Below the pieces are notes generated by a model. That model had not been told where the DNA came from, did no database searches, and saw only the letters and a list, made by a program, of their open reading frames with translations. Positions 15,431-40,289 of a DNA stretch of 64,000 nt are shown one piece after another. Where the stretch lies: positions 1,054,001 to 1,118,000 of the forward strand of contig NW_026782016.1 of the NCBI RefSeq assembly GCF_031769215.1, in the 5' to 3' direction. Each line of letters starts with the position of its first letter. Positions within the stretch are counted from its first letter, which is position 1. The position numbers and the translations under genes are program-made. Source of the DNA: Ylistrum balloti (Eukaryota).

Positions 15431-16416
15431 ACACTTATTTAATTCAGTACATTGCTTCTGATTAATTTAAACATCAGATGGGTTTGAAGGTTGATGATGA
15501 TGTTGAGTGACTTTTGTCTGAATAGCTAGCTCTTTAGGAAACTTTTTTCATGTTTTAAAAAAATGGTTTGAACACCTTCTGATATTTTTTCATTAATTGT
15601 GATATGACTGTAAAGTTAAATATGTCAGTCATTTGATCAAATTAGATAAAGAACATCCTGATGTGAATCCCAAGGACTCCAAATTGCATTAGAAACGGAT
15701 GATCTAAATAAGACGAATAGAGGAAAATCTCTTAAATATATTCTCTGGTGGTCTGGTCTCTGTTGGCAAAAGGGGTATGACACTAAAAGACAAAAAGAGG
15801 TAAATGCATGGATGTAGATCTTGAATGATATAGATTTACTCTTGAGGAAACAGGACTTAAAATTTAAAAATGGCTGGTTATACCTGATCTGCACGTAAAT
15901 TGTGACAAAACGTCTTTAGCATCCTTGGGTGAAGAGGTGTAACTTTGTATAAAAGGAGGATTCATGGTTCATGCTAGGGTAAAAAGAGGAAATAAAGGTA
16001 AAGAATTCTTTTGTTTGGATCATGGGATTTGGAACTTTGGAGTGAGAAGCAAATTCTTGGATGACACGGAATTGCAACCCCTCCACCTTTATCAAAGAAT
16101 CTCCATTGACCCTTCATAAGGGCACAGCAGCAGTGTTAGATAGTATATGAAAATCTTTAAAACATGTTTTTTGTTTATATACAGAAATAGAATTTTCACT
16201 AAAGATAACCAGTTATCTCATAGGGGGGAACGCAGACTTGACTCCCTCTCATTTAATACATGTATTATGCAATAGTTCTTTGAATTCTTCATACTGATTT
16301 TAATATTATTTTTGCTGTAATCAAGTTCACAGTGCCAGTAATACACACAATTGAGTTTACTCTGTACTTGTGTTTTTTTTTTTATCTTGCAGTGATAATA
16401 AGTATAAGTGACAAAG

Positions 16417-19400
16417 ATGGCAGATTGTGAGAAATTGTTAGTTGCAGCTATAGACTTTGGCACTACCTATTCAGGCTATGCATTTTCATTTCGACATGAC
16501 TTTGAAAACGACCCGTTGAAGATCAGTGCCAGTACCTGGAATGCGGGGTCAAGGGCATTAGTGTCCCTGAAAGCTCCTACAACAGTGCTCCTGGACAAAA
16601 ATGAAAAATTCCACTCCTTTGGGTATGAAGCTGAGGACCACTACTCTCAATTAGCAGAAGATAATGACCATTTAGATTGGTACTACTTCCGCAGGTTTAA
16701 GATGATGCTTTACGGCAAAGAGGGTAAAGGTGTAAGTATGATATTTGCCCCATCAAGATATGAAGCTTTTTAATCATGTTATGTATTGATTGAATTTGTA
16801 AAATATCTAAGGAATGATCGGATACATTTTGAAGGAGGATATCATGAGATTAAATATAGAGTGAGTAGAGATGACATTGTTTGAGTAAAGCCTGTGGAAA
16901 ATGTAGTGATTCATTACATGTAGTAACTCTTATTCAAGTAAGAGATTGTAATATGTCATTTATATTCACCATGAATGACAGAGCATTTCAAACATCATAT
17001 TGCATGCTCATGCAAAAGTCAGCTCTGTCTTTTATAATGTCCATAAATGCCTTAACAAGAGTATTGAATTCTTCACATTACCTTCTGATACATATAGCTT
17101 GATCTAAACTAAAAAAGTATTTTTCATCAATAGTGTACCTTGTAATCTATCATGTGAATCAAGCATTGCTGTGTCCATAGCGGAAATAAAGACATTGTGA
17201 TAGTCAAGCACTGTGTGTCATTTATCATACTCTGAATTCCACTTCTTTCTTGTTAGTTATCAATCAAATGTTCTTGTTTTAATGTAACGATACATTTCAT
17301 TCATAACATTATGGTATTTATCTGTATACAAAAGTAAAGCCAGTATAGATTCATTTTAAAATTTGCCATTTTGTACAGGGCCTGTCAAAAAAAGTGATGC
17401 TGAAAGATATCCGAGACAGAGAACTTCCTGCCTTGAAAGTGTTTTCAGAAGCCATAAAATATCTGAAGGGACATTTGCTGATGGCTCTAGACAAGAGAGG
17501 AGCAGGTGTTAAGGAATCTGAAATTGAGTGGGTACTCACAGTACCTGCTATCTGGAATGATCCTGCAAAACAGTTTATGCGAGTAGCTGCTGAAGAGGTA
17601 TGTATTTAACTTTTGCCCAGTCTTTACAGCAAGTGATATTATAACATGCTGGGATGATGTCTGAAGTTAATTCATTATTGCCTTTTACGGTATGTTTTTT
17701 TTTCTTCTAAATATTCTCCGTTCTGGAACCAAAACCTCTTGACTGATAAAAGTACACTATTGGTCAGTATATTACGATAAAGATTAATGTCAATTTTAAT
17801 TGAAATTCTCTTGGAATCATATACCAGAAGGTAGATGTGATAGAGGAAACTTATTCTACACCAGTCCTGTAGATAGTCTACATTTACAAGTCATTCATTC
17901 ATTACATCACTGTAGAAAAATACTTAAATGAAAATTATAAAAATCTTCAAACAGCATCTTCTGACTATCTAAATACCCAAGGGTTTTGATAATCAGCTAG
18001 TAGCTTTGCTTTGATTAAAGTGTTTTTGGTTGTTCAAATAAATGACCTTGACATATTTATAAGGGAGAAGGGCTCAGATTATGTAAAAAAAAACAAATCA
18101 AAATTTTGTATTCTAGATACATGTCAGTGATTTCATGTGAAGAAAACCTGACCAATTACAGACTGATATGCTCCTTTGATGACTACAAAGGAGCGATACC
18201 CATCTTCAAAGCCAGTACAACATACTATAAGTGATATCCAGATTTGTTTAATGTACATCAAATGATCAAATTAGTTTTCTCGCCTTACCCAATCTTAAAT
18301 TTTGCTATGGGATGTTCAAGGACTGCAGGAAGTGATAGTGAGCAAAATCTCTGGAGTAATGAGGAAACTTTAAAGGTCACACAGGTCAAATGTGATTGAA
18401 TCTTTAAACAACCTTTATTGAATAACCAAAAGAACAAGGGTAATTTTTTGTCAGCAATATGCTTGGGTAATGGACTTTTGAGTTTGTATAAATAAATTAC
18501 CTTAATTGATTTTCAACTTGATCATTAGTAAGGGGTTAAGTATCTGAATATAGCCAAGTGAAGTCATTGAAATGACCAAGAGACAATAAAGATCGTCTAA
18601 AAGACACACAAATGAGTAGCAAAAAATATGGTACCAAAGACATAAAAGTGAGTATTGCCTCAAAACAAAATCAGAAGTAGTAAAAGTAGCTCCAAATAAT
18701 GAATTACTGCATCATACATGTTGTTCGTATAGGTCTTGTCAATAATACTAAGGGCCTTATTTTCGAAACTTTGGAGGGAAATGGCAACTGAGGAAAATGC
18801 AAATTAGTAAAAAAAAAAATCTAAAAATCAAAATCTGAATCTAGATGAAGGGGCGCACTAGCCCTAATAATTTTTGTTATTTTCCCTATTAAGGGTTAAT
18901 ATCAGAAAAACGTAAGGTGAATGATACAGGAGTCTTGCTGAGCACCAGGTTGTACCTTAAATGCCAAGGAGTGCAGGAACTGACATTATCAGTGTTAGGT
19001 TTATGTAAATTGTTTATTTGTGCAGGCTGGAATCAAAGGTGACCAGTTGAAAATTGCCCTTGAGCCAGAAGCTGCCTCACTGTATTGTAAAAATCTACCA
19101 GTGGAAAAGTTGGGTGGATCAGGACAGGGCTTCACCTGTTTTTCCAAGGGCAGCAAATATCTGGTGCTGGATGCTGGAGGTAGGTTAAAATGTTCAAATG
19201 TTCCTTGAAACAGGTTTGTTTCATTAGCATCCTCTCTGTAAGCTATGTAATACAGCACACAATGTATTCAGAGAAAAACAGCTTTATATATGAACTCTTG
19301 ATCAAATCAAATATTTAAGCTGAATTTCTGTCTCCTTTTGTCAGCTATAATCATTGAAATTTGCATTCCGAGGATAACATAAAAGTGTCTGAAAGGTATT

Positions 19401-22400
19401 TAGAATGTATCATATAGGTCTAGGAGTTAAAAGGAAATCTTGTTCATGGAAATAGGTAAAATAAGTGTGGTGATTTCCTATCTAAAACAAACATGTGTAT
19501 AACTGTGGTTTACCAGCATCTAGAGAGGATTACATAGATAAAACAAACTGGTCCTCTGTTATATTATAAAGGAGGATTAACAATTTTTGTGTATACCTAA
19601 CAATATAATAATGACAAACATAGAAACCATGTCCTTCCCTGTTAAATGAAAGCTGTATAGAATAGCAGAGCATCAAATTCTTATATAGTTACAGTTGTTG
19701 AAACTGTCGCACTGTTTCCTATGTCAGAGAGACTTTAATACAATCCAAATTCGCAATTATTGCATGTGCAATAATACACAAGGCAAAATGTCATACATCC
19801 CAGACCTGTTCATTAGGTGTTGGGTAACACCACTAGTGAGGTATAAAGATCTTTGTATAGTCTAACAAATTATGTACAATGTAAAAAGAGAGATCGGTTA
19901 CATGTACTATAGGCTTTAAGCCCCTAAACTGCTGTGACAAGAACACTGACTTGTCATTATTGTGCATTGTCATGAAGTCATCTTAGACTAACAGGTGTGT
20001 GTACAACTGCCAGCCAGTGATGAAGTTGCAGACCAAAAGTTGTAATTATATATATATATATATATATATAAAACCTTGTTAGAATCTATTTACATGATTG
20101 CAGCACTTAGCAACTGGTTCAGAATAGCACAAAACTTGTACCAGGGACACCAAATCCTAGACCAAGCAGACAGATGGTGATCAAGTTTGTCTGTTCCTAT
20201 GACATTGAAATCTGTGTTGTGTTTCACTAAGAATTTTCCTTTGGTCTGGCTAACACCCTCATATCCCTTTAATCTGCAATGCCAAAATTATTATTACTAG
20301 CATTTAAGTAGAGAAATTGTCATGCACAACAGATGTGTGTCAGTAAAATCTATTATTTAAACAGATTTGAAATGAAATCTTAAAATCATAACTAATAAAT
20401 ACAGGTTTTTTCTTTTGTTTCTCAGTATTAGGAGGTACTGAAAATTAACATTAGTCAGTTTGAGTATTTATGAGAGTGTTACTTGATATTTAAACAACTG
20501 ACACTAATAAAGCAGTTATTCAATATTCAACAGCTTTTTCCTTATAACACAATTTTTTGTGTAAAATGTTGGCAACTGACAGACAAACTGATAATACTAA
20601 GTGCAAGGTTTTACAAGATGTGGGCTTATGAATACAGTGAGGAAGTTGTATGGCCATCATGATGATATCATTAGGAAATGTTCTATTTCCTTGTACAGTT
20701 TGCTAATTGCTTGGTAATAAGTTTGCCTGGTGGTTCCCTTATATACTTTATTCCCATATATCAGTTGTTGTTGATGAAGCATGAGGCACTCATTCTTTCA
20801 GAACAACTAATCTTATTTTCATTGTAGCTTCTCGGAAGTCTCCATGTCAATATTTCTTCTATTCATTTTGGTCTTAGTCGCATCAAATTTGAGTTTAGAT
20901 TAAGGTCAATTTTACATGTAGGTATTCCCTTTGTTGTAACAGCTGATTCATGATAATGTAACAAGACGTGTCTACTATACTGGGGTTAAATGACATGTAT
21001 ATCACAGTAATGTGCACATATATTGTATATCAAACATGTCACATATAGGGAAGTTATAACCACAGTGAAGTTGGAAAGACAAGTATCTGAATGTTGCGCA
21101 TGAAGCAAAACTTTAATGTACAATGTATATATTCTTCCTGCTTTACAAGGTGAAATTTGAATCATAAATAGTATTGTCACCACAAAATAAATGGTATGGT
21201 GACGGTTCTAGACAGAATGTGGCCACGTGTCTTTATCAATATGATAGCTGTTGGAGAGGATGTTTTGTTCTCTGTGACCAGCCTTTGTATTTGTTTCAAG
21301 CTTTAATCTGTGATGATTTATTGCGTTGTCATATTTCCTTTTCTCTTTTCATTATTGTGATGTGTAATTCCTTAGAAGAACTGACAGCTGGTCATGCCTA
21401 ACATCACACATGCACATAAATAGTTCACAACTTGTGTTTCTCTACAATTCTGTGTCAACAAAAATATGTCGTTTTTTTTCTAAAATCCCAAGGAAAGTAT
21501 TACAAAAATATGTTAAACGGAGCAATTTAAACATGTGTTTTAATTAAAGATATTTTTCACCTGCATATCATGTTATTCTTTAGTGTATTTATTGAGTGAT
21601 TTAATCACTAGATATGAGCTAAAAGATAGTGGTATTAAAGAAACAGAATCTGTGACAGTAAAATCTCTACAGCTGTTGAAATGTTACTTATCACTTGCTA
21701 TAAGGAATAGATTGTCTCCTCTTAAAACTTGTGGATGTGCATGTACATAGAGATTAATAATGTACGTAGGGCTGTTAGGAGAGGTACTATATCTGCCCCA
21801 AAGTGCATGAAAGTGTTACTGTTCTCAGTATGTCTGGAGTTAGATATTTATGTTGATAAAGTGGCGATGTGTTTAATAATATATAGAGTTATCTGGAGAG
21901 GTGCATGTCTCTAATCTGTGATGAAACAAAGTGCTTGGAAATGTTACTATTCACAGTATATGTCAGGAATTAAATATTTTCATTGATAAATTGGCAATAT
22001 AGAAGGTGTTTAATAATGTATGGATGGTTTAATAAATAGAGGTGCATGTTATCTCAAATCTCCAATGAAACATTTTTGAAGGTTTAATCCTAAATATCAA
22101 TAAATTTGCTAGAATATCCTCTTGTATACTTGTCTGGTGAAGGATATGCTGATAAAGGACGATGATATTCAAATGTATACTGAAGTCTAAGGGAGAGCAT
22201 ACAGTTGCCGCTTTGTCCATCAATCCATATGTCTGTTTGTTCGTCCATTTGTCAGTCCATCTGTCATAATTTTTGTCCGGAGCTTAACACAAAACCTATA
22301 ATAGGTATCAACATAAAACTTCATAGGTAGATTGATCTCGACAAGAAGAAGTGCAGTGCATAACAAGAATCATCTCTCTCTTTTGCATAATTTAGGGGTT

Positions 22401-24756
22401 CTTGTCCTTTAATATTTTTCATACTTAAAATATTTCCCATTCGGTAAGCATCACCCATCCCTGACAACCCTTGTCATCAGTTTAGGTCATAAGAAAGATT
22501 CTAGATCAATATTTATTAAAAGCAGAAATATTGAAAAAAATTGTTTTTTCAATATTAAAAATATTAATTTGTGAAATTGCTGAAATAAATAAAATGACTC
22601 CTCCAGGTGACCCTGAAACACTGTATTTTTTCCCTGTTTTCAAGCAATCTATCGCAGCATGTTGGCATATCTGCAAGAAAATGTTATTTTAATTGTGGAA
22701 AATACACAGACGACCCATCCAAAATATCAATATTATTGTTGCCTGGTTGAAAGTGCTATTTACATGTACATGCACTTTACTTCATTAAATCTCAAGAATT
22801 CTTGTATTATAGTTATATTTTGCTTGTGAATACCATATAACCCATGGTTCAGAATAAGTACAAGTACTTGAATTTCTTATGAAATTTCATGTATGGACAG
22901 TTATGAAAGTTACTGTATTATAGGGCTACTGTACTTCCTCATCATGATTTTGACCTTTGATTCGATCACTGGATTTTCCTCTCTTAGGTTTCCAACTTTA
23001 GGTCCTAGAAGGAAAAAGCAGTTGTATGATGCAATTGCATCAATTATTTTATTTAACTACTACGGTATATCTAATATGTAACCAACAGTTGTGTGTGTTT
23101 TTTTGACAATTTTGGTTAGGTGAAACACTCTCAGTACAGTTCAAATTGAATATAATTATGGCTTTTGGGTATTTACTAAGCCAAAAAGTTCATGTGTTCA
23201 CACAGGCTTAATAAATATGAACCACATATGACATGGTGTACTGTAAACCAGGTCTATGTATTTCATATGTTATGTAAGTGGTCATGTAGTCTGTTTGCTG
23301 AATTACCTTTAAACTCTGAAGAGGTTCAAGGTTCTTGACTCTTGTTAAAATAAATGTATAAACTACTAAGTCTACATATGAAGCTGCTGGTGCAGCAAAA
23401 ATAAGCTTGTGTTCAGGAAAGCCACAGGTAATCATAGATTTTTGTTGTTTGATAGAACTATTTCAGAACACCATAATTACCAACATACATTTAAAAAAAC
23501 TAACATTCTGGCCTTAAAATTATCATACCACCAAGCGTCTCCTGTCCTGTACATTTACATGGACACGCTATTGAAATAAATCAAACACTGAAAGTAATTC
23601 AAAGCATTTGCGTTCCACTTTAAACTGTTGTCTTAACAAAGCAAGTGTTTTGAAGACAGAGGAATCCTAATGGTATTCACTTTCTGCAGGAGGAACGGTT
23701 GACATCACTGTGCACGAAGTTGAACAAGATGGACATCTCAAAGAACTGGACAAGGCCAGTGGAGGATCCTGGGGAGGGACTACAGTGGATGAATCATTTC
23801 AACAAATGCTAATAAAGATTGTTGGGAATGAGGTCATGCAGGAATTTCGCAGTGAAAACACTTCTGATTTTGTCGACATGTTTAGAGAGTTTGAGACTAA
23901 GAAACGTACAGTGGATCAAACAACGAAAAATAAGGTAACGATGAAAATCCCCATTGCGCTTAAGGAACTTTTTGAGACAAATACAGGTGAAGACTTAAAT
24001 GAAACCATCGAGCAGACAAATTATAATGGCAAACTTGTGTGGAGTGGGGACAAACTCAGAGTTCATCCAGAAACATTTCGCCAGTTGTTTTCCATGGCGC
24101 TAGATAGTACAATTGAGCATGTACTGGGTCTAATTGCCCAAAAGTCATGTGAACGCACAAGTACAATCATCATGGTTGGGGGATTTTCTGAATCACCACT
24201 ACTACAGTCCAAGATTAAAGAGAGCTTCAGTAAAATGCGTGTCATTATCCCACCAGATGCAGGACTGTCTGTCCTCAAGGGAGCAGTCATTTTTGGTCAT
24301 ACGCCCAGAGCAATCAAAGCCAGAAGGGCCAAGTACACATACGGGGTTGGTAGTAATAGCAAGTTTGATTCCAAAATTCATGATGAGAGCAGAAAGTTTT
24401 TCAATGAAGATGATAAGACTTACTACTGCAGAAATACCTTTTCTAAACATGTCACCAAAGGAGACCTTTTGGAAATTGACGTAGCCCAGAGTGATCAGCC
24501 TTACAGTCCAATGAGTTTAACTCAAACATCAATCATGTTCCCATTCTTTGTATCGGATGACACCAATCCAAAATATTGTGACGAACCAAACTGCGAGCAA
24601 ATTGGGAAAATGTCTGTAAATATACCTAAAGGAAATAAAGTCTCTGACAGGACAGTACGTGTCAAGTTGATCTTTGGAGGAACGGAAATCAAGGTTGAAG
24701 CTACCGTAGAACATACTAAACAAGTAACGGAAGCAACACTGAACTACTTGGATTAA
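16417..24756 (+). CDS. HSPA12A: HSPA12-type atypical Hsp70 (H1, using terminal exon 4a); 4 exons, ~584 aa
   Basis: Exons 16417-16731, 17379-17597, 19026-19179 and 23690-24756, intron phases 0,0,1, all GT-AG. A 5'-UTR acceptor ends at 16392. Motifs VAAIDFGTTYSGYAF, WVLTVPAIW, ALEPEAAS.YC, VLDAGGGTVDIT and MVGGFSES are typical of HSPA12. Confidence 0.93.
20046..20070. repeat. (TA)n microsatellite in H1 intron 3
   Basis: About 12 TA units. Confidence 0.9.
22175..22440 (+). mobile_element. Degenerate non-autonomous DINE/HINE-like repeat in H1 intron 3
   Basis: gagagcatacagttgccgctttgtcc followed by a decayed (GTCC/GTCT)n tract and ...aaaacttcataggtagattgatc; this resembles the microsatellite-plus-core layout of mollusc Helentron derivatives (from memory, not searched). 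Confidence 0.4.
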
Positions 24757-24810
24757 GAAATGAAGGATAAAGTCACCAAAACCTTTGTGTAAATGTGATT
24801 TTAGTTCTGT

Positions 24811-25375
24811 TATTATCTCAGCTGGTCTTAAGGACCAGTCAGTTTATGCCATGGCATGGCATCCGTTGTCCATCCAGTGTTCGACCTTCAATTTTTTTCT
24901 ATAAATTGCTAATAGTCATGAAATCATGGTTACAAGACCTCTAGGGCCTGAGGGTCTAGGTCAATTAGGGGAAACAGGGAAAATCTTTAAAATCCTACTC
25001 CTGTTGTGGGAATGATCGCATTGTGACAAAATTTGGTATGGAGCATTGTTGAGTGAAAGGAAATCAATTTTGTATAAATGATATGGGGCTGGCCTTTTGG
25101 GACTGGAGAGGCAGGGCCCATTAGGGGAAATATAGGAATGACTGGATTTTGCCCATATTTGGATTGAAGCATTGTTGGGTCATTTGAAAACAATTGTGTA
25201 TAAGTGGTAGGTCCTGACACCCTAGGGAAGTAGGAGCAGGACTCATGATACAGAAAATAGAACAAAATCCTTCTTTTGTATGAATCAGACCAATTCTTTC
25301 TAAATTTGGTCTGAAGTATAACTGGTTTTACTCACCCCACGAGGGACAGAGGGTTGGGGCACATTCGGAAAATAC
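24811..25375 (+). mobile_element. Non-autonomous Helentron (HINE/DINE-like) element
   Basis: 5' tattatctca, perfect hairpin ctggtc-ttaag-gaccag (24822-24838), then a decayed gtcc microsatellite and GC-richer core segments (aaatttggt..., ggggc..). Right boundary approximate. Confidence 0.55.
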
Positions 25376-27611
25376 GTGCGTTGCACAATTAATGATCAAT
25401 TACACTTTTCTTCTAACTTATATAACTTTTATCTGGAAATTTAAATTTTGGTGTAATTGTTCTTTCTGGTTTATCAAATAGTAAGGTCCGTTTGATCTCC
25501 ATAACTACAAGTGCATCATCCTTATAGTTCTTGTCTAGGGTATCGCAAGTGGAGTACAGTATATTTAGTTTGAAATTTAAATGGGTTGACTGAATAAAAT
25601 AGAACTTAACAGTGTAATTGTTGGAGAAAGGATATAAGAAACTCGCAAAACCAAGCAATATATGAAAATGTAGGACTTTTGATATACTAAGTGTATACAA
25701 ATATAACGTACTTATGGAAAAGAAACTTTGAAGTACTTTAGGTATTTAAGTCATTAATGAGAATATTCTAAATGTGTATACATACATATATTAGGGTGCG
25801 AAGGCGAAATTAATCAATTATATTATATAAGATATTATATCATGCAATTCTCTATTAGCGAAAGCGCTTGATCTTTTTTTTTCTTAGTCAATTTGATTTG
25901 ATTATTCACATTGATTTGAAGCTTTTGTCAAACGTATATGGTCTGCTATATTTTTTTCAGGAGCTATTATAATGACTCGATAAGTTTTGCTAGTTTTGAT
26001 ATGCTATTGTGATATATATAAGTTTCGTTTTCATCTCATTATCACATTTGCTTATGGGTGATAGCTACTGAGGGAATATTTTCTTTATATGGAAATTATT
26101 CTTCGACTAGGGATAATTTAATTCTGTATTATTACTCGATATTGAGCATGTGATCCCAGGGGTAAAAAAGAAGGAGATTCATTAGAGGCAGGATATCATA
26201 AATAGACTGGAAGAACACAGTTTAAACAAAAGCACAAATATCCAATGAATAGATGTGGGCCAGAATTATGGTGATGAAAACTAATTAAATATTATGGACT
26301 TTATGTTTCATTAACATGAAATTTTTATCTTAATCGATTTTCAAATTTGTGCTTGTATACAGTTATATCAATAAAGAATAAATGTATTGAAAACATATTT
26401 GCGTAAATTTTCTTTGTATGATTTTGAGCATGACATGCATAAATTATGAGACTATTTTCCATGTGCTTTTTTATTCACTATTATGTGAGCTTTGCCTCAT
26501 TTCATTGTAAGCAGTATTGGAATCATGTTTTTTCGTTATTTCTCCTGTACAGTTATTATATTTTTAGAAAAGCCTACATGAGATATAAAATAACACCTGC
26601 CAGTTAAACGTATTTGCAGTAATGTTTTGTTTCTTTTTTTTTTTTTTGCAAACTTGAAAGAGTAAATAGCTTTTTTTCCCAAAAGTGTTCAATTGGAATT
26701 AAAAATTAATACTACATATACACGCTTGGTAATGAGATAAACTAAAATGGAGAACAGTAAGACCTACTTTTGCAATTGAGGAAAGTAAACAGACTCATTT
26801 GTTCAATGCATTAAAAAGGGAACTACAAGAAAATGCTATATTACAACATGAAAGATAATTTGATCAGTTCTATAAAGTTACATTAGCATGAAAGGAGAGT
26901 GTACGTTACCAATCTGAAAAGGACATAAAGGAAATATATTATTCTGCATTGACAAATACATTGCTGTGGTTTTCTTGTTTGATTCATTAGTATGATTGAG
27001 ATAAAAAAGGTAATGTGTCCTAGCCGAAGGAAAAAATATGATGAACATATGGATATACATTTTCGTTGGGCGACTTATGATTTGTTCTGTTAAGACTTTG
27101 CTCCTGTTTCAAAACATTGAGTTGTAAATACGATTCTTACTTCATGATAATAAAGAAGGTGTAACACTGGTTTTGTATTTTGCTCCTATATATTGATCAA
27201 TGGCTCTTGATCATATGATCGATACCCATGGCGATATATGGATCAATATTGGAATATATTTTCCTGGAAAGCGATGCTTATAGACATTGTGAATTCTATT
27301 GCTCCTGATGTTAGGGATTCTATGTGGGAAGGATGATGTCTATTTCATTATAGAAAATAACACTTTTTCATATACAATGTATATCATTTATACATGTGTT
27401 TCAAATGATGGTATTTTTAGCATGGATGGCATTATGGATTTAGAGGTCAGAGATGTCAAATCGGCTTGTCCTTTAGTCCCCGATATGCATTTATGAAATA
27501 TGTATTTTTTTATTTGTTTACCTGGCCATTTTCGTGTCTGTATCATAATAACATGCAAAAGAGCTTCGTTTAACAAGAACTGTCTTAATAAGTCGTCCCC
27601 CTTTTCTGAAG

Positions 27612-28625
27612 CAGAACGTACTAATGTAGCTGTTCTGGAAATACAAGCAGACGGCTGTTCCAAAGTTCTTGAGACGGACCGCCAGTGGTCATTATGAATG
27701 AAGAACGTCACTGATGTGTTTCCCAGCATATCGACAGAGATTGGTGTAATGAAAGAGTTTGAGTACAATTATATTGAAGATTACAATAGCATGATTCAAG
27801 AGTTTTGTTGTAAACTGAAGCAAGTAGATTTGTGTTCTAGCCGGGATTTTACATTCAAAATTCCATTTGCTCTCTTAAAGATTTATGGTAAAACTGCATT
27901 AGGTAGTATGAAGAAGGCTATCGTTAAAGCAAACCTGACCGGGAAAATAGGTTGGATAGCAGACAAGATGAAAATTGAGAAAAACACATTTTTAAGGTTA
28001 TGTGCAAATGCTCTGGATAGTACCATATTGTTTATTCAAAGTAGTTTGGCAGGTCAGTCTTGCACAGGTACCAAAATAGTCTTAATGACCGGAGATTTAT
28101 CTGAATGTCCATTACTGCAGGCAAGCATGAAGTTGGTCTTTGGTATGATGAAATTCATGTTTCAATATTCTTTCCCTTGTGCTGCTAACATTGGTGCAGT
28201 CTTCTATGGACACACTCCTTTAGCTGTTGAGCCTGAGTTTACATATGGATTTCGTACTAATGCAATTTTTGATCCCAAAATTCATCCCGAGAACAAAAAG
28301 ATCTTTAACGAGAAAGACCAAACATATTATTGCCGAAATGCGTTTTCTAAACAGACAACCAGGGGAGAAATGCTGGGAATCAACATGGCCTAGAGTGACC
28401 AGCTCTATCACAATACATTTCTTACAGAACTCTATCACACTCCCTGAATATATCTCGATTGACAAAAATCCTAGATTTGTTGATGAACCATATTGGATTA
28501 CATTATTTAAAACACGATAATGATATGGCAATACATGTCCTGTTCCTGTTTGCAATAGCGGAACTCAGAATTGTAACCATTGATTGTTCTACTCAGGAGT
28601 TTACTGTGCACAGGCTTTCTTATCC
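27612..28625 (+). pseudogene. Decayed HSPA12 terminal exon (4b)
   Basis: Position-equivalent phase-1 acceptor (ccttttctgaag|CA). Collinear with exon 4a along its length (FDPKIHPENKKIFNEKDQTYYCRNAFSK vs FDSKIHDESRKFFNEDDKTYYCRNTFSK). In-frame TGA at 27695, TAG at 28391 and frameshifts after ~28430. Nucleotide-binding motifs are eroded. Confidence 0.85.
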
Positions 28626-30099
28626 ATCTACCTGGATGCGCATGGAAGCATGGAACAGAAGCTTGAATGAGAGCATGTGTAGAACTTCGAATGATACAGT
28701 ATCCTTAACCAGCAGCAGACCATGTCCGTCATACCGTTACCATGACAGAATTCGAAGAACTATTTATAGATAACGATATTTTTCCTCGTGATGCAGGTTA
28801 ATTTACGTAACCAGATAATTGCACAGTAGCTTGCCCTTTCGGGGCTCCTCATGGGCATTTTCGGAGTCTCTGTATAAATATTTCTTTTGTTCATATGATT
28901 TCGTTGAGCTTGTATTTGGGTTTGTTGTGGTTCCCGTTGACAAAACAGTATTTTCTTTATTGTCTATGTCATAATGAGTCAATATTGCCTTAATATACAA
29001 AATATCCATCGTATAAGTATTATTTACATTAATTAATTAATTACATTTCATTCTGTATGTAGAGATCTAAAATGACAATTTATCTTACATTGTTTTGTCG
29101 GCGTTTTGGTTGTTGCTGGTTAGACACATAACTTATATTTGCTGATTCCAACAATTCCACCTCTTAAGATGAAAAATCTACACATGGAATTGACACACAG
29201 ACTGATCTTACTTGTCAATATGTGATATTTGTTGGTCTGTGCGAGTTGATGAGTATATGGTAGACATTTTACAACAAAAGTAATTGTATATGCATCAAAA
29301 ACATAACTTCAATAGCTGTCCTGTTAAAATGAACTGTCAAAGTGTTTTTAAAATGTTGTATTACAATAGTAAAAAATAAATGTCGACATATGGCCATATT
29401 ACACAAATATTTATGTTCTTTCATTAGATAACACTGTGAAGTCTAATACGAGACATTCAATAATCATCAAATGATGTTTCTTGCCTACTTAAATTATACA
29501 TGTATATATAATGATTTTGTTTGTCCATTTTTGGTTCCAATGTTCATGCGAAATTCATTTATTTTCAAAGTTTTTTAAGTGTCATTGACTTACACCAGGC
29601 TTTGAGTTCCTCTTTGGTATCGGACATCTTTTTATTTGTGTCAGATTGTGTTGTTTAATGTGTGCCTTACCAGACTTTCAATGTGCGAACGTATGAGAAC
29701 ACAAAAAAGCGAATTTCGTACTTTATTAAATGGGGTGTGCGTCACAGTTTTTCACTTTCCGTCTTGGTGTGTTTGTGCCTGCCTGCGTGTGTGCGTCTGT
29801 GTCCGTCTGCTTGTGTGCATGAGTGCGTGTATGCGTGCAAATCTCTGGACAGATTTCTTTCATATTCACACGAAAACATAACATTATCAGATTATAATGT
29901 TTTTTCATTGGTTGTATGCAAAATGCAGCTTTCCGATTAATTGATTCTTCTTTTCGTTTCTGGTGTAACACAATGACTAAACACAGTGTTTACTTGGGTT
30001 GACCGAAACGTTTATTTCATCGTATAGTGGTTTTCCATAGTTAGTACTTCGCGTTAATATCCATTACAAAAGATAGTTCCTGATCAACATACAGCAGCA

Positions 30100-30729
30100 T
30101 GTCATGGCACCAAAACTAAACACCTGTGTAAGGCAGATAAAAACTAAACACCTGCCCGTCCATATCAAAGAGTTCCATACAAAGGTTCATGGGCCAACTT
30201 GGCCAGGACCCGCTCCGTCTCCACGTCCGACTCCCAACTCTCTCTAGCTACTCGATCCCAGACTCAACTACACTTCTGCTGGCTATTATCTTTGTATAAA
30301 TAATACCCAAATACTTAATTTAAGCCTAGTCCCAATTGGACAACAATAACCCAGCCCCCGGAGCATCTAATTATGAAGGCACGTGCGACTAGGAGTACCC
30401 GTTATCAACTTCCCATCTTTGATCTACCTTATACATTGTTTCTTATCTTGTTTACTTACAAATGTGTTCGCCAGCGCGAGGCATACAAGAAAGCATCTAT
30501 CTGTCCTGATCAATCATACTGGCGATATTCTGCCACGGTGCTTCACCACTTGGGTACACACCCCGCCCGTTATCAGGCGTGCATCACTATCTATCACTCA
30601 CGGGATCTTTTCCTCGGTCCAGCATTAACTGACTTTTGACCTGATGTACTTTAAACTAAGATGCTGCTCTCTACGATACACACCATTCCAAAACTACCAT
30701 TAAACCCATTTTTTACTCATTTTGTTACA
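30100..30729. mobile_element. Candidate solo LTR (Gypsy-like), ~630 bp
   Basis: Starts TGTCATGG and ends TTGTTACA, GC-richer than flanks, tataaata inside, attaaa ~25 nt before the end. Flanks (cagca/ctgga) are not a clean TSD. Confidence 0.4.
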
Positions 30730-32150
30730 CTGGATGAAACCAACTTGATAATGATTGGAGGAGGCAATGTCAATATGCCACCTTGCAGTGGGTCGTCTAT
30801 TGGAACTTTGTTTATATGAATGGAATATATGTTTACACATTCACACCATGTGTGGATACTGTCATTCAAGAATTTAAACAAAAAAACCAAACTACAACCA
30901 TCATAAGATATTTAAATATCTAACAATGTACACAAACAATAAACGACAAATTAATAGCGTATTTAATATATGTTTGTTATTTTGTGTTTTACGCATTTCT
31001 GTTTGCAATGAATTCGGAATGACTGAACATGACCCGAATTAGCTGTGAATGATGTCACATTATATTATGTCATCTGTTGTGATTTGTTGTACAATAATCC
31101 TCCATTAGATTATCAAATTTATACATCTATTTGTTAGTTTTGTTTTTAAAACATATCTAAGAAATTAATTATAAACTTTGAAGAAAAAGCAAATTGATCA
31201 TGAATGGCTACGTGCATTAATTCATTATGATATTGATGGCAGGATGTATAGAGATACGATACAACAACAAAATCAAAGTAAGTTTGATTCACATTTCATT
31301 TCTTGTGAAAGTGCCAAATGATTAATTTTCAAGAACACTTGCGTTTTTACACCTGCTATTATCTTAATACATATATACAAGTTTAAGCAAGGGCGGGATC
31401 ATACCTAAGACACTACAGAAGTGTACCAAAGACAACCATATTGGCAGTACACTTTACCAGTTAGAAGTAGATTTAAGTCAGTCAAACCTTGAAACAAACT
31501 GCTTCCTGTTGTTATTTGGTCCTTCTACGACGACGAAAGTACAAATGTTAAACAAGCATGTACGCTTAAACATGAATCTTAGTCACTCTTGTTGGTCTAC
31601 ATCGGAGCATATGAGGGATAATACGAGGGAAGAAAACCAAAGTACTAGAGCATGGTTATATTACCCCCGGATCCGTTAGTCCTCTGCCAAAATTTACACG
31701 GATAAGCGATAAAAGACATATACATGAAAGACAAAATTAATAATTTATGATTATATGTAATATATGACAGATTTTGATATAAGCTGCATCATACCGCTGT
31801 TCTACTTCAGTCCTTCCTCTGGATTGATAAGTCATCCATCTCTGACCAGTAACACTGTAACTATAACTTTGTGTGTCTTTAGTTTAAAATTTTCTGTTCT
31901 TATTAACAGTTACTTCTATAATTGTACAGCACAAGTGCTTGAATGTAATAGTAAAACACTCAATAAATTCTATGTGTTAAATTTCGTAATTCACATGTAT
32001 GATGTGTTATGCACATGTTAGATTTGTTAACTTAATACCGAAAAATATAAAACTACATTCATTTTAATCAATTAGTAGTATATACGGTTATAAATAACCA
32101 AAGTCAGCAAATTGTGAATTAAAATTCGTTATCATTTTTTGCACTTTAAG

Positions 32151-33217
32151 GTGGAACGGTTGACATCACTGTGCACAAGGTTGAGGATGACCTGACACTT
32201 ACGGAGCTGGCCAGAGCCAGTGGTGGAGCTTGGGGTGGAACACAGGTAGACGAGGCTTTTAAGCAAATGATCATTAAAATTGTTGGTAACCCGATTATGC
32301 AAAGATTTAGTCGTGAGCAAACATCCGATTTTGTGGATATGTTCAGGGAATTTGAAACAAAAAAGAGATGTAATGTTGAAGGGACGCTATCAAAAAAGGT
32401 GACAATGAAAATTCCTATCGCTTTGAAGGAAATGTTCGAAGAAGAGACAGACGAGGATATAAAAGAAGTTGTGCTGCAAAGTTCTTACACTGGAAAACTT
32501 GAATGGGTTAATGATAAAATCCGGATAGCACCTGAGACCTTCAAGTCACTGTTTAACTGTGCTGTAGCTGATACAGTGTGTCACATCCAAAATCTCCTCA
32601 GCAAACCTACCTGTGAAGGAACGAAAACAATCCTCATGGTCGGGGGATTCGCAGAATGCCCTCATCTGCAGAAGGGTATTCACGAAGCTTTTCCACACTT
32701 ACGAATAGTCATTCCATATGAATGTGGATTATCCGTTTTAAAAGGGGCTGTGATATTTGGACATCGTCCAAAAACAATTTCCGCACGAAAAATGAAATAT
32801 ACGTATGGCATTGCAACAAACAAGAAATTCAAGCCATTCAGACATGATCCTAACAAGAAAAAAACCTTGAAAGGCGTTGATTACTGTACAGAATTATTTG
32901 ACCAGCATGTGAGGGGTGGAACAACTGTGAAGTATGATGAAATTCAAAGCGACCGCAAATACAACCCATTATATGATGACCAAACGACCCTCGATTTTCC
33001 TGTGTACCAGTCCACAGATGATGACCCTGAATATGTCACTGACAAGAGTTGTGAATATATAGGGAATATGTCCATTGACATACCAGATGCCAGTGAAGGA
33101 ACTAGCAGAGCGGTCCGTGTCAGGATGATCTTCGGTGACACAGAGTTAAAACTGGAGGCAACACAAGAAGGCACAAACAATAAAACAGTAGCTAAATTCA
33201 ACTTTCTTGGAGATTAA
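32151..33217 (+). CDS. HSPA12A: Intact HSPA12 terminal exon (4c) with no exons 1-3 of its own
   Basis: Acceptor tttttgcactttaag|GT GGA ACG GTT GAC (phase 1). 1067 nt, the same length as exon 4a, open to TAA. Motifs GGTVDIT, SGGAWGG and MVGGFAEC. AATAAA at ~33284. Confidence 0.85.
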
Positions 33218-33749
33218 CGTGTTCTTGGATTGGATCTTTCATACAAGTTGTCTTCCTCATACATATTATCCGTTTATGATTTGAATAAAAGAGGGATATC
33301 CAAATTCATATCAATGTTATATTCGATGGTTCTGTAAATTTTTGAAATTCAGTATCTTCAATGTCTTCTTTGAGCACAGTGGCATGGGACAGAACTACAG
33401 ATGTACTTTTTTATAAACATGTTGGTGTTATTTACTGTCGGTGTCATAACAACAAACCCAGCTTAATTAACTTTATGTAAATCATTTTAGTGAAAAATGC
33501 TCAAACCAGGTAAGTGTAAATAAGAACGGATGTTTCTTTTCGACACATTTTACAGATGTGTTTTTCATTGGTTTTGATTTAGTTGATAATGATGGTATTC
33601 ATTGTTTTCTATTACATCTATGTCATTTTTTCTGCTATATATTAGCATGCATCTTGATACCATGTTAATGAGATGTGAAAATCCTATACACTGTACTTCG
33701 CATTGCAATATAGTACATCATAATAAACTATAAATAATCTAAATGATGT

Positions 33750-35390: not shown

Positions 35391-38300
35391 TTATATTTCG
35401 TAACAAAGACCACAAGAACAAGTGGAAGCGAATTCAGAGAATTTGAAAGCGAAATAGCCGGTGTGTGTGGTAGAGGAGGAACGCCTTCTCCGATCTGGGC
35501 TTTCTTGATCCTCGATGAGGGCGTCAGTGTTACACAGATTAGGATCGTCCTGAATTATGTCAAAGTAATAATCTTTGTCCGGAATGAAAAAGTCACAGAA
35601 CACGAGAAACCTTTGTGTAAAGACTCCACTTTCCGAACATCGCGAGGCATTGTCACAGCAATATTCCCTATAAAACAACAATTGAATGCACATTTTATCA
35701 TTGAAATAAAATGTCCGTGAAAATTTTAATCAATCGCTTGATATTTAAAAAACTAACGGGAATGATTTTTTGATATTTCGTATATTGCCAGTGATATGAT
35801 AGAAATATTCTGTTCTGCAAAACTGTGTACCCTCTTTTACGGAAATATCCCTTTCCTGGTTAAATTGACCATTCAAAACGATACTTTTAGTAACAAAATC
35901 TAGGGTCACATACTGTGTCTTCGCCTTTGAAATGCATGCAAAAGTTTGATAGGGTACAGAATGTTTTACTTTTTTCCAGGGTAATCAAAACATGGAAACG
36001 ATTTATATCTAGCCACATTAAAAGCATAAATTTGCAAAAACTGTTTAATTGGAACGTCAAAAATATGTATTCTACAAGTTATCAAAACTCTATCAAAACC
36101 TATTCATAGGGAAGTCGTCATACGGACAATTAGCATTGTAATCAAAGCTAATAAAAAGCAAGCATTGGTTTATTTATAGAAAACAATATCCATATGTTAT
36201 CTATCCTGTATTTACCTTGTGCAGGTTATCTCCTGCACATTTTGCAGATCCGGTCTTGCTACCAAACACAGTACTTTACCGTCATGTTTGAAATATCCAT
36301 GTATTTTCTTTGATTCACTTGGACAAACAGGCGTCCCCCTGTTGTAAAATATTTAGGTGTAAAAGTAAATATAATTGAATATAATATATATATATTTATT
36401 TAATTTTTATTGTTTACCGGTGTGTAAACTGCATTTTTACAGCGATTTTAAATGATGCGCATTAGCGCGTCGTGTTGAAAGTATCGGTTAAAATATGCAG
36501 AGTACACAATAGTTAACAACAAAAAGAAAACTTAGGTTTTATATTACATTTTGACGGTTATTTGTATGCACTACTTAACACGTATGAAATGATAATTGTC
36601 ATCTATTTGGGGACGTTATGCACACTGACGGGCCAGCCCGACAACTCATGGAAAAGCAAAATATTTTATTCTATGTTGGTGTTAAAGGTTGTCAGACTTG
36701 TTGTTTTACCCAAGTGTAACAACACTTTCGTAGTTAAGGTTAAATAGGGGATAGTCTCCTACGTGTACACACTGTGCCACGTACCATTCTGTATGTATGT
36801 CATAAGCCCTATATATGTCTGCAAATAACGAGATTATTTCCGTTATGCCTATTTATCTTTATCAATAAGAATTTCTAAATGTTCTCATCCGCAATTAACT
36901 ACACATGTTATAGCAAATATTCCTGTTCACTGGTTTATATATAAACTTACGTTGATGGATGCGGATCTTCCTCCTCAACCTTTGACAGTCGATGTATATA
37001 GCTAAACGCCCTGGAGTTCTCACGAAGTCTCGACGTCATCCTTTCCCTACATTTCAATGAACACGTGGATTTTTTGCTGTATTGTCTGTTTATTTAAAAC
37101 ATTTCGCGTTGTAAAAAGAAGTTCATATATTTTCATACGTATACAGAAACTTAGTAGTTTATGAGAGTGAATTATTTGAAGATCAATGAATATATCGTAA
37201 CGTGCATAGATTAAACCATTCACTGTACCACAGGAACTTGGCACGAATTTCTTACCCTCGGATCATTTGTATTACAAATTTATTAAAGACCTGCTTCAGT
37301 ACTTACAGTGTATTTCTTCTAACATTTACAACAGAGAGACACATTTACCACAGAGAGACACACTTATCCCTGAGACACTTTTATCCCAGAGACACCACAG
37401 AGAGACACCCTAAGCACAAAGAGACATACCACAGAGAGACACACTTATCCCAGAGACTCATTTACCACAGAGACACATACCACAGAGGCACATTTACCAC
37501 AGAGAGACACATTCATCCCAGAGACACCACAGAGAGACAAACTTAACACACAGAGACTCTCTTACCACAGCGAGACACACTTATCACAGAGAGACACACA
37601 TACCACAGACATATTTACCACAGAAATATACTTACCACAGAGATACACTTACCATAGAGACATACTTACCACAGAGATACATTTACCACAGACACATTTA
37701 CCACAGAGATACACTTACCACAGAGACATACTTACCACAGAGATACACTTACCACAGAGACACATTTATCCAAGAGACACCATAGAGAGACAAACTTAAC
37801 ACATAGAGACACCCTTACCACAGCGAGATACACTTATCACAGAGAGACACACATACCACAGAGACACAAATATACTTACCACAGAGAGACGTTCCTACCA
37901 CAAAGATACACTTTCCACACAGACACATTCACCACAGAGACACACTTACCACAGATACACATTTACCACAGAGATACACTTACCACAGAGACACGTTTAC
38001 CACAGAGAGACGCGCTTGCCACAGAGAGACACACTTACCACAGAGATACACTAACCACAGAGACACATTTACCACAGAATGACGCACTTACCACAGAGAG
38101 ACGTGCTTACCACAGAGAGACACACTTATCCATGAAACACCACAGAGACAAACATATCACACACAGACACCCTAAGCATTTGGAGACATACCAAATAGAG
38201 ACACACTTACCACTGAGAAAAATATTCCAGAGTCCGTAAAGGTTCATATACATAGTTCTTTTTGTCCACCTCCGTTTTGTCCACGTATATAACGCCACAA

Positions 38301-38413
38301 TCGTCCTCGCTTTGATCGGAGCCAGAAGAGATGCCGACACAAATACAAAAGAGGATGGCTAACCCAAGTGGTGATGTCTGATATGAAAGATTAAGGTTAG
38401 AGTTCCGAAACAT
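35391..38413 (-). CDS. Secreted Cys-rich protein, Spaetzle/neurotrophin-like cystine-knot candidate; 4 exons, ~232 aa
   Basis: Exons 38413(or acceptor 38377)-38211, 37046-36951, 36338-36216 and 35667-35391. All introns are phase 2 with strong GTAAGT/GTAAAT donors and YAG acceptors, and they join without stops. Signal-like LAILFCICVGISSG; domain PVCPS...LVARPDLQNVQEITC...CC...TQRFL...FSEFASTCSCGLCYEI. Confidence 0.75.
37325..38210. repeat. ~17-19-bp AC/AG-rich minisatellite (cacacttaccacagaga) in an intron of the cystine-knot gene
   Basis: Dozens of degenerate units, with a larger internal block duplication (~37520-37610 vs ~37770-37860). Confidence 0.92.
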
Positions 38414-39885: not shown

Positions 39886-40289
39886 TATTATTATTATTTT
39901 TTTTATTACATACTTAACGGCCCGTCAACACATAAAAGGCCATAAGGGCCATCAAACAGTAAAACACACAGCGATCCAAAAGGAAATAACATTAAACAAA
40001 CCAAAAGGTAAAAGACAAATGTTAAAAACCTTAAATGGGTATGTTAACACAAACGATTAAAACGGAACGTCATAGTCTATTATATAGACCAACATCTTTC
40101 AGATAATGTAGAATTTTACAGATCTCAACAGTTTCAAAAAGGGATTTTGGACATGTAATGTTACGATAAAAACGTTCTCGAGTAGACAGAGGGTCACTAC
40201 AGTCCAATAAAAAATGCTTAACGGTGAATGGCTCATCACATCTTATGCACCAAGGATTATCTTCGCCTTTCAACATATATAAATGTGTA
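39886..40289 (-). mobile_element. 5'-truncated Nimb/I-clade LINE 3' end with 12-bp TSD
   Basis: ORF2 C-terminus THLYMLKGEDNPWCIRCDEPFTVKHFLLDC...LKDVGLYNRL* (C-x2-C-x7-H-x4-C), short 3'UTR, A/(TAA)n tail. Identical atgtatcaacaa at 39874-39885 and 40290-40301. Confidence 0.88.

What the first reader, a model, noticed from the sequence alone, without database searches (positions are those of the whole stretch)
16417..33217. One HSPA12 N-terminus, three tandem terminal exons: candidate mutually exclusive last-exon Hsp70 locus
Seen: the plus arm has a single set of exons 1-3 (16417-19179) ending in a phase-1 donor. Three homologous copies of the ~1.07-kb terminal exon follow (4a 23690, decayed 4b 27612, 4c 32151), each with a phase-1 acceptor at the equivalent position. 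I found no intact DFGTT, WVLTVPAIW or LEPEAA exon between 24756 and 32151, although the two minus-arm paralogs each carry all four exons. Exon 4c is only roughly half identical to 4a by eye, yet it has the same 1067-nt length, no stop or frameshift and intact GGTVD/VGGF motifs. That pattern argues for purifying selection and therefore expression. Inference: exon 3 splices to either 4a or 4c, so one gene makes two Hsp70s that share NBD lobe I but differ in lobe II and the whole substrate-side C-terminus. HSPA12 expansion in bivalves is established; diversification by alternative last exons is not something I know to be described.
Basis: partly seen in the sequence, partly recalled or inferred. 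Interest (0 to 1): 0.78.

Follow-up and report, generated by a model that had tools for sequence, protein, structure and literature searches.

The report
Scallop HSPA12 gene, two alternative last exons
One scallop Hsp70-family (HSPA12) gene carries a single set of front exons and two intact, diverged copies of its large last exon, so it can make two chaperones with the same front half and different back halves; this layout is conserved in four scallop species and is already in their RefSeq annotations, so it is real but not a new discovery.

Summary
The window is Ylistrum balloti. Exons 1-3 (16417-16731, 17379-17597, 19026-19179, ending in phase 1) occur once on the + strand. Three homologous terminal exons follow: 4a (23690-24756), a decayed 4b (about 27612-28490) and 4c (32151-33217).

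Profile searches find no second set of exons 1-3. Exons 1-3+4a equal XP_060065858.1 (isoform X1) exactly. The same record already carries a second 584-aa product that ends at 33217, which is exons 1-3+4c.

Pecten maximus, Argopecten irradians and Mizuhopecten yessoensis have the same layout and annotated X1/X2 pairs. Within each of the two X1/X2 pairs I compared (P. maximus, A. irradians), the N-terminal 229 aa are identical and the C-parts are 55-57% identical.

4c orthologues show dN/dS of 0.06-0.13, the same as 4a. That constraint includes the 36 codons tested, which all lie before 4c's first Met at codon 39, and the phase-1 acceptor is conserved. A 55-nt intron element just upstream of 4a is 79% conserved, against about 40% for other intron flanks.

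A probable RNA run holds pieces of 4c. No exon 3-4c junction read could be obtained here.

Best reading: alternative last exons that arose by tandem duplication.

The parts
16393..16731 (+). Exon 1. An acceptor at 16392|16393 is followed by 24 nt of 5'UTR, then the ATG at 16417 and 315 nt of CDS (105 aa, with the DFGTT phosphate-1 motif). The donor is at 16731|GTAAGT.
   Evidence: An acceptor just upstream of the ATG is present in all four scallops, which implies a further non-coding 5' exon upstream.
17379..17597 (+). Exon 2, 219 nt, phase 0/0 (WVLTVPAIW region).
   Evidence: The size is identical in four species.
19026..19179 (+). Exon 3, 154 nt. It ends in a phase-1 donor inside the DAG|GGTVD phosphate-2 loop.
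23633..23689 (+). Conserved intronic element immediately upstream of the 4a acceptor. It holds a purine-rich TTGAAGACAGAGGAA stretch, a CTAAT branch-point-like site and the pyrimidine tract. It is a candidate splicing-regulatory element for the 4a/4c choice.
   Evidence: 42 of 64 aligned columns are invariant and mean pairwise identity is 0.79 across four scallops. Every other intron flank shows 8-10 invariant columns and 0.38-0.46 identity. No conserved RNA structure was found.
23690..24756 (+). Terminal exon 4a (proximal), 1067 nt. It encodes residues 230-584 of isoform X1: NBD lobe II, the linker and the SBD-beta-like domain.
   Evidence: Exons 1-3+4a are 100% identical to XP_060065858.1. 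dN/dS against orthologues is 0.07-0.13.
27612..28490 (+). 4b, a decayed third copy of the terminal exon (pseudo-exon). It has two in-frame stops, a frameshift, lost ATPase motifs and a missing 3' part.
   Evidence: An orthologous relic lies in M. yessoensis at L004:25591-26247. The probable RNA run has no coverage of it.
29963..30731 (.). High-copy dispersed repeat inserted between 4b and 4c. It is not part of the gene's coding capacity.
   Evidence: Word depth in whole-genome contigs is 500-3000 here against 9-16 in the flanks, and contigs break at its edges.
32151..33217 (+). Terminal exon 4c (distal), 1067 nt. It encodes residues 230-584 of the second isoform.
   Evidence: The ORF is clean and joins exon 3 in phase 1. 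The record has a second 584-aa product ending exactly here. It is 78-79% identical to the C-parts of the X2 isoforms of three scallops. dN/dS is 0.06-0.13. Pieces 32221-32382 and 32690-32868 are present in run X2, which holds no intron or repeat sequence.
33284..33289 (+). AATAAA poly(A) signal 67 nt after the 4c stop codon.

Best explanation
This is one Ylistrum balloti HSPA12-type Hsp70 gene with two alternative last exons.

How it works. Transcription starts upstream of 16393, and exons 1-3 encode NBD lobe I. The phase-1 donor at 19179 is joined to one of two acceptors. Joining to the proximal acceptor at 23690 (4a), with the transcript ending after 4a, gives isoform X1. Skipping 4a and the dead 4b and joining to the distal acceptor at 32151 (4c) gives the second isoform.

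The products. Both proteins are 584 aa. They share residues 1-229 and differ from the GGTVD phosphate-2 loop onward, that is in NBD lobe II, the interdomain linker and the beta-sandwich substrate-binding-like domain. They are 61% identical in lobe II and 41% identical in the C-terminal domain.

Origin. The array arose by tandem duplication in the scallop lineage. Either the terminal exon alone was duplicated, or whole genes were duplicated and the downstream copies later lost exons 1-3. One copy, 4b, has died.

Regulation. The choice is probably controlled at the proximal 3' splice site, where a 55-nt intronic element is conserved.

Shown here: the anatomy, the conservation, the selection, the existing annotation, and the presence of 4c sequence in a probable RNA run. 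Inferred: actual use of the junction in Y. balloti, the regulation, and any functional difference between the two proteins.
For: Anatomy and phases are.

Annotation. The window is identical to JAUZWB010000294.1. That record carries two called 584-aa products, 16417-24756 and 16417-33217. Exons 1-3+4a equal XP_060065858.1, 'isoform X1'.

Other species. P. maximus (XP_033742410/411), A. irradians (XP_069129616/617) and M. yessoensis (XP_021355916, X2) have one set of exons of 315/219/154 nt and two terminal exons 10-16 kb apart. Within each of the two X1/X2 pairs I compared (P. maximus, A. irradians), the N-parts are 100% identical and the C-parts are 55-57% identical.

Selection. dN/dS is 0.06-0.13 for 4c and 0.07-0.13 for 4a. 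The first 36 codons of 4c, which precede its first Met at codon 39, have dN of 0.01-0.11 with dS of about 0.7 to saturation. The AG|GTGGAAC acceptor is conserved, and in-frame stops lie 4-43 nt upstream of it.

No alternatives upstream. There is no relic of exons 1-3 and no conserved block in the 4a-4c interval.

Phylogeny. The 4a and 4c clades are sisters (SH-aLRT 95) within bivalve HSPA12.

Regulatory hint. The intron element upstream of 4a is conserved.

RNA. Run X2 holds 4c exon pieces and most of 4a, but no intron, no 4b and no high-copy repeat, so it is probably RNA.

Domains. The exon 3/4 junction falls in the DnaK DLGGGTFD-equivalent loop. The AlphaFold model (pLDDT 89) matches NBD plus SBD-beta of DnaK and BiP over its full length.
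Against: No read or contig spanning the exon 3-4c junction was seen. The single read-laying run returned contigs only, and the X2 pieces lie inside the exon.

No Logan-derived protein spans the junction, and none carries a 4c-type C-part from a transcript. 4c may therefore be weakly or narrowly expressed.

The evidence behind the Gnomon X2 models could not be inspected here. In the later-annotated species they could have been propagated by protein homology.

No canonical AATAAA or ATTAAA lies within 400 nt after the 4a stop in Y. balloti.
Confidence: 0.88

Rival explanations
1. 4c is a separate transcription unit. A promoter, and perhaps a short non-homologous first exon, in 24757-32150 would drive an N-terminally different or truncated protein that lacks NBD lobe I.
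For: No junction read was obtained. The 4a-4c interval is 7.4 kb and could hide a small exon. HSPA12 genes in this cluster are otherwise compact, independent units of about 4 kb.
Against: The first 36 codons of 4c, which all precede its first Met at codon 39, are under purifying selection. The phase-1 acceptor sits in exactly the family position in five taxa. No block in the interval is conserved between the four species apart from the 4b relic and repeats. A protein starting in the phosphate-2 loop would lack half of the ATP site. The annotations in four genomes join 4c to exons 1-3.
Confidence: 0.06
2. 4c is a silent duplicate, and the X2 isoforms are artefacts of the annotation pipeline, for example homology-chained models.
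For: No 4c-type transcript-derived protein is in the large protein collection. 4c coverage in the probable RNA run is low (depth 3-4.5).
Against: A 355-codon ORF is kept intact in four species whose synonymous sites are at or near saturation. Its dN/dS of 0.06-0.13 equals that of 4a. The neighbouring 4b shows what a silent copy looks like: stops, a frameshift and lost motifs. 4c exon pieces are present in a run that lacks all intron and repeat sequence.
Confidence: 0.04
3. An assembly collapse removed a second set of exons 1-3 that really lies upstream of 4c.
For: Short-read contigs break at the high-copy repeat at 29963-30731, so that stretch is not independently bridged.
Against: Four independently assembled genomes show the same layout. 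The window and three of the four loci have no gaps; L004 has one N run, at 36652-40713, which lies outside the gene. Whole-genome contigs from three runs agree with the window on both sides of the repeat.
Confidence: 0.02

Closest known systems
[quoted passage not shown]
   Same: These are the same gene. Exon sizes are identical, the N-terminal 229 aa are shared, and the two C-terminal variants are orthologous to 4a (82-85% aa) and 4c (78-84% aa).
   Different: Nothing differs in kind, because the window is the Y. balloti member. This analysis adds the decayed third copy, the selection estimates and the conserved intron element, none of which is part of the annotation.
Alternative last exons (alternative splicing coupled to alternative polyadenylation), including homologous duplicated terminal exons, as set apart from true mutually exclusive exons by Hatje et al. 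2017 (PMC5740500)
   Same: Upstream exons are shared. There are two terminal exons, each with its own acceptor and stop codon. A canonical poly(A) signal was found after 4c only. Only one terminal exon can be in a mature mRNA.
   Different: Here the two terminal exons are paralogous, equal in length and phase, and very large at 355 codons, so they replace 60% of the protein, including half of an ATPase domain.
Mutually exclusive exons born by tandem exon duplication (Kondrashov and Koonin 2001 and Letunic et al. 2002, cited from my own knowledge; review PMC9013439, found but not read because one search failed)
   Same: The alternatives originated by tandem duplication, have the same length and phase, and are used in a one-or-the-other pattern.
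   Different: Strict mutually exclusive exons are internal and rejoin a common downstream exon. These are terminal, so exclusivity follows from polyadenylation and not from a splicing incompatibility. No docking/selector-type RNA structure was found.
Tandemly expanded HSPA12 genes of bivalves (e.g. PMC11268181, PMC10939072, PMC11750468)
   Same: It belongs to the same subfamily, has the same four-coding-exon structure and sits in a tandem cluster.
   Different: The described expansion is by whole genes. Here the diversity comes from extra terminal exons that share one promoter and one N-terminal half.

Membership tests
HSPA12 subfamily of Hsp70 | Hsp70/actin-fold ATPase domain recognised by family profiles | tested here: met
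   Pfam PF00012 scores 42.9 bits for X1 (cut-off 20.6) and 27 bits for the 4c-type P. maximus X2. phmmer hits the DnaK and BiP NBDs.
HSPA12 subfamily of Hsp70 | Phosphate-1 (DFGTT), phosphate-2 (DAGGGTVD) and adenosine (VGGF) motifs present | tested here: met
   All three are present in exons 1-3+4a and in exons 1-3+4c. They are invariant in a 50-sequence alignment. They are lost in 4b.
HSPA12 subfamily of Hsp70 | Closest named relatives are HSPA12A/B, not canonical HSPA1/5/8/9 | tested here: met
   [quoted passage not shown] The rest are unnamed or 'hypothetical'. None is labelled as a canonical HSPA1/5/8/9.
HSPA12 subfamily of Hsp70 | Overall fold: NBD followed by a beta substrate-binding-like domain | tested here: met
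   The AlphaFold model has pLDDT 89 and pTM 0.87, and residues 438-579 are all-beta. Foldseek matches full-length and lid-truncated DnaK and BiP with TM up to 0.63-0.68 over about 600 columns. There is no alpha-helical lid.
Alternative last exon (ALE) gene | One set of upstream exons and two or more terminal exons, each with its own 3' splice site and stop codon | tested here: met
   The same holds in three other species.
Alternative last exon (ALE) gene | Each terminal exon has its own polyadenylation site | tested here: inconclusive
   AATAAA lies 67 nt after the 4c stop. No canonical hexamer lies within 400 nt of the 4a stop in Y. balloti, although P. maximus, A. irradians and M. yessoensis have one within 400 nt after 4a. 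No 3'-end data were available.
Alternative last exon (ALE) gene | Transcripts that join the common donor to each terminal exon | not testable with these tools
   Only contigs were available. The probable RNA run X2 holds 4a and internal pieces of 4c but no junction. Both products are annotated, but I could not see the evidence behind those annotations.
Mutually exclusive exon cluster (strict sense) | Homologous exons of the same length and phase, in tandem | tested here: met
   Both are 1067 nt with phase-1 acceptors, and they are 52-53.5% identical in protein.
Mutually exclusive exon cluster (strict sense) | Internal exons that are both spliced onward to a common downstream exon | tested here: not met
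   4a and 4c each end in a stop codon and are the last coding exons. I therefore do not file this as a strict mutually exclusive exon cluster.

The most novel reading that the evidence does not exclude
Scallops keep a regulated switch, at least as old as the common ancestor of these four scallop genera, that mounts two different 'lobe II + substrate-binding domain' modules on one shared Hsp70 lobe I. The switch would be controlled by a conserved intronic element at the proximal terminal exon. This would be a way of diversifying a chaperone's client or nucleotide-cycle properties within a single gene. I found no description of it for any Hsp70-family member in the literature searched.
Probability: 0.6. 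Interest if true: 0.5.

Novelty: new member of a known kind. Interest (0 to 1): 0.38.

Why it matters
Bivalve HSPA12 expansion is usually counted gene by gene. This locus shows that some of the diversity is made by alternative terminal exons, which share a promoter and half of the ATPase domain. Gene-family counts and expression studies that collapse isoforms will therefore miss or merge two proteins that are only about 53% identical over 60% of their length.

The locus also offers a natural domain-swap experiment. The same lobe I is paired with two lobe II/SBD modules, each under strong constraint. In addition, a sharply conserved 55-nt intron element is a ready candidate for studying last-exon choice in molluscs.

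The isoforms are already in RefSeq, so the advance is in interpretation and not in discovery.

Tried and rejected
(1) Junction evidence from public reads. Both run searches and the single read-laying run were used. Runs X1, X3 and X5 turned out to be whole-genome contigs. X2 is probably RNA but gave only two internal 4c pieces, so no junction was seen.

(2) Junction-spanning protein fragments from transcript assemblies. A word search with M. yessoensis X2 residues 130-330 found no scallop fragment crossing residue 229/230.

(3) P0004/L005, the closest non-annotated 4c-type hit. I hoped it was a transcript, but it is a genomic contig with the intron and acceptor intact.

(4) Hidden or decayed exons 1-3 between 4a and 4c. 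tblastn and per-exon HMMs with filters off found nothing.

(5) A conserved RNA structure at the 4a acceptor element, of the docking/selector type. The consensus fold was only -4.7 kcal/mol with no covariation, so I rejected it.

(6) Tandem or inverted repeats that might explain the 4a-4c interval or the high-copy repeat. Nothing informative was found.

(7) Literature. Six searches found no paper describing alternative terminal exons in HSPA12 or Hsp70. The call to read the review PMC9013439 failed on a malformed search term and was not repeated.

(8) dS between 4a and 4c is saturated, so the duplication cannot be dated from synonymous sites.
Full report
**What is in the window**

The window has no gaps. 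The mechanical ORF list shows two 348-aa open frames on the + strand, at 23710-24756 and 32171-33217, and a broken one at 27698-28393.

tblastn within the window finds the N-terminal exon three times: 16408+, 48068- and 56053-. It finds the large terminal exon five times: 23710+, 27632+, 32171+, 45121- and 53523-. Exons 2 and 3 have one + copy and two - copies.

Reading the splice sites gives these exons:
- Exon 1 CDS is 16417-16731.
- Exon 2 is 17379-17597.
- Exon 3 is 19026-19179, with a phase-1 donor.
- 4a is 23690-24756.
- 4c is 32151-33217.

4a and 4c are both 1067 nt, and both begin with AG|G(A/T)GGAACGGTTGAC. Joining exons 1-3 to 4a or to 4c gives a clean 584-aa protein in each case. 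4a and 4c are 52-53.5% identical in protein. Their DNA similarity stops at the exon borders.

**No second N-terminus**

I built per-exon profile HMMs from 67 full-length homologues and searched them with all filters off against every open stretch of at least 12 codons in all six frames. They recover the three known copies of exons 1-3 at E-values of 1e-20 to 1e-54. Between 24757 and 32150 they find nothing better than E = 3.7.

Cross-species blastn of the interval shows only the 4b relic and repeat families.

**The third copy is dead**

4b (about 27612-28490) has two in-frame stops and a frameshift. GGTVD has become ERTNV, VGGF has become TGDL, and the last 55 or so codons are missing.

M. yessoensis has an orthologous relic at L004:25591-26247. 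It shares the ERT replacement of the GGT motif. This suggests that the ATPase motif of 4b was already lost before these two lineages split. P. maximus and A. irradians show no 4b at E <= 0.01.

**Identity of the locus and what is already annotated**

[quoted passage not shown] It returned 'isoform X1' of the same genera and of Ylistrum balloti at 53-54%.

My exons 1-3+4a model is 100% identical to the Y. balloti X1 protein, XP_060065858.1. The encoding record is JAUZWB010000294.1 of GCA_031769215.1. It is identical to the window over 28,340 bases. It carries two called 584-aa products that share a start. In window coordinates one runs 16417-24756 and the other 16417-33217.

The loci of the other three species show the same thing:
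- One set of exons of 315, 219 and 154 nt.
- A 4a-type exon and a 4c-type exon 10-16 kb apart.
- Two annotated products with the same start.

Within each of the two X1/X2 pairs I compared (P. maximus, A. irradians), X1 and X2 are 100% identical over residues 1-229 and 55-57% identical afterwards.

**Selection**

| Comparison between the four species | dN/dS | dS |
|---|---|---|
| 4c orthologues | 0.06-0.13 | about 0.8-2.1 |
| 4a orthologues | 0.07-0.13 | about 0.8-1.7 |
| Shared N-part | 0.03-0.16 | about 0.6-2.9 |

For the A. irradians-M. yessoensis 4c pair dS could not be estimated because it is saturated.

The first in-frame Met of 4c is codon 39. The first 36 codons, all upstream of it, have dN of 0.01-0.11 against dS of 0.7 to saturation. 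The acceptor is conserved to the base, while the intron in front of it is not, and in-frame stops lie 4-43 nt upstream. 4c is therefore translated from an upstream exon in phase 1. The only phase-compatible coding exons on this strand are exons 1-3.

A fifth, more distant 4c-type exon with the same acceptor lies on a genomic Logan contig of unknown organism.

**Age and origin**

In a maximum-likelihood tree of the C-terminal parts, the four 4a sequences form one clade (SH-aLRT 100). The four 4c sequences plus the unknown contig form another (99). The two clades are sisters (95), nested among other bivalve HSPA12 proteins. The window's minus-arm paralogs lie far away.

The duplication therefore happened in the scallop lineage before these four genera diverged.

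The spacing is 3.9 kb from 4a to 4b and 4.5 kb from 4b to 4c. This is close to the size of a whole compact HSPA12 gene in the minus arm (3.6-4.1 kb). I cannot distinguish duplication of the exon alone from whole-gene duplication followed by loss of the downstream copies' first three exons.

**A regulatory hint**

The 60 nt of intron upstream of the 4a acceptor have 42 invariant columns and 79% mean pairwise identity across the four species. That is as high as the coding exon itself. Every other intron flank of the gene, including the one upstream of 4c, has 8-10 invariant columns and 38-46% identity.

The element (23633-23689) contains a purine-rich GAAGA(C)AGARGAA stretch and a CTAAT branch-point-like site. 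No conserved secondary structure was found.

From general knowledge, conserved intron sequence next to an exon is a hallmark of regulated alternative exons. That this element sets the 4a/4c ratio is my inference.

**RNA evidence**

Runs X1, X3 and X5 are whole-genome data. Their contigs cover introns evenly.

Run X2 has 19 Mb of contigs. It holds 87% of the sampled words of 4a. On the laid stretch it holds only two perfect pieces inside 4c, at 32221-32382 and 32690-32868. It has no intron, no 4b and none of the repeat, which is 50-200 times over-represented in the genomic runs. X2 is therefore most likely RNA, and 4c is present in it at low depth. No junction could be read.

No transcript-derived protein spanning the junction exists in the protein collection.

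**What the swap does to the protein**

The exon 3/4 junction falls inside DAG|GGTVD, the equivalent of DnaK DLGGGTFD. The NBD alignment to DnaK ends near residue 428.

The AlphaFold model of X1 has pLDDT 89 and pTM 0.87. It shows an all-beta domain at residues 438-579. Foldseek aligns the whole chain to NBD plus SBD-beta of DnaK, BiP and Ssb, best to ATP-type docked states, with no helical lid.

4a and 4c are 61% identical in lobe II and 41% in the C-terminal domain. At 43 positions each clade is fixed for a different residue. Both keep the GGTVD and VGGF motifs.

**Comparison with what is known**

The architecture is the alternative-last-exon class. Hatje et al. 2017 explicitly set homologous terminal-exon candidates apart from true mutually exclusive exons, because terminal exons are chosen through cleavage and polyadenylation (PMC5740500). 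It fails the strict mutually-exclusive-exon definition because there is no common downstream exon.

The protein is an HSPA12-type Hsp70 by profile, motifs, relatives and fold.

Six literature searches found nothing that describes alternative terminal exons in HSPA12 or any Hsp70. The bivalve Hsp70 family papers they turned up are whole-gene surveys by title and abstract. I opened only PMC11750468 (N. subnodosus) and PMC11988029 (C. angulata), and neither links splicing to HSPA12. The isoform pair itself is already present in four RefSeq annotations.

**Verdict**

It is better worded as alternative last exons derived from a tandem duplication. It is a real, conserved and selectively maintained feature, but the gene models already exist. 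Novelty is limited to recognising the pattern, the dead third copy and the conserved intron element.

Confidence in the model is 0.88 and interest is 0.38. The scan's other notes on this genome concern neighbouring genes only.

Noticed in passing
window:29963-30731: A dispersed high-copy repeat lies between 4b and 4c. Word depth in three whole-genome runs is 500-3000 here against 9-16 in the flanks, and contigs break at both edges. No terminal inverted or tandem repeats were found, so its class is unknown.
   Followed up: partly
window:24938-25139 (also 25009-25083 / 25135-25209): A roughly 120-nt repeat unit lies just downstream of 4a. It has several copies in the equivalent position (1.8-4.6 kb downstream of the 4a exon) in A. 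irradians, M. yessoensis and P. maximus. It could be a shared satellite or transposable-element family, or a conserved feature of the region after 4a.
   Followed up: no
L004:25591-26247 and window:27612-28490: The dead terminal exon 4b is orthologous between M. yessoensis and Y. balloti. Both copies have ERT in place of the GGT phosphate-2 motif, and both have lost the second G of VGG. P. maximus and A. irradians have no detectable 4b.
   Followed up: partly
L005:1-1381 (Logan SRR27895284): A genomic contig of unknown organism carries a 4c-type terminal exon. It is 62% identical in protein to 4c and 51% to 4a, with the same phase-1 acceptor. It sits as sister to the scallop 4c clade, so the 4a/4c split may predate Pectinidae.
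   Followed up: partly
L001:46048-46308 and L003:37713-38685: In P. maximus and A. irradians the next HSPA12 paralog starts 8-9 kb downstream of 4c on the same strand. In Y. balloti the next paralogs are on the opposite strand, beyond a gene noted by the scan as Spaetzle-like. The cluster has therefore been rearranged between genera.
   Followed up: no
window:6417-7221 (= L002:1-805, minus strand): A Sulfotransfer_2 (PF03567) gene lies upstream of the HSPA12 gene in Y. balloti. The same family lies upstream in M. yessoensis (L004:1-196), so synteny is conserved.
   Followed up: no
window:4001-6000: This stretch is a composition outlier, with GC 0.445 and GC skew -0.525 against about 0.35 and about 0 elsewhere in the window.
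   Followed up: no
window:16380-16392: A 3' splice site lies 24 nt upstream of the ATG. It is present in all four scallops, so the gene has at least one further non-coding 5' exon and its promoter lies upstream of 16393. I did not locate it.
   Followed up: partly
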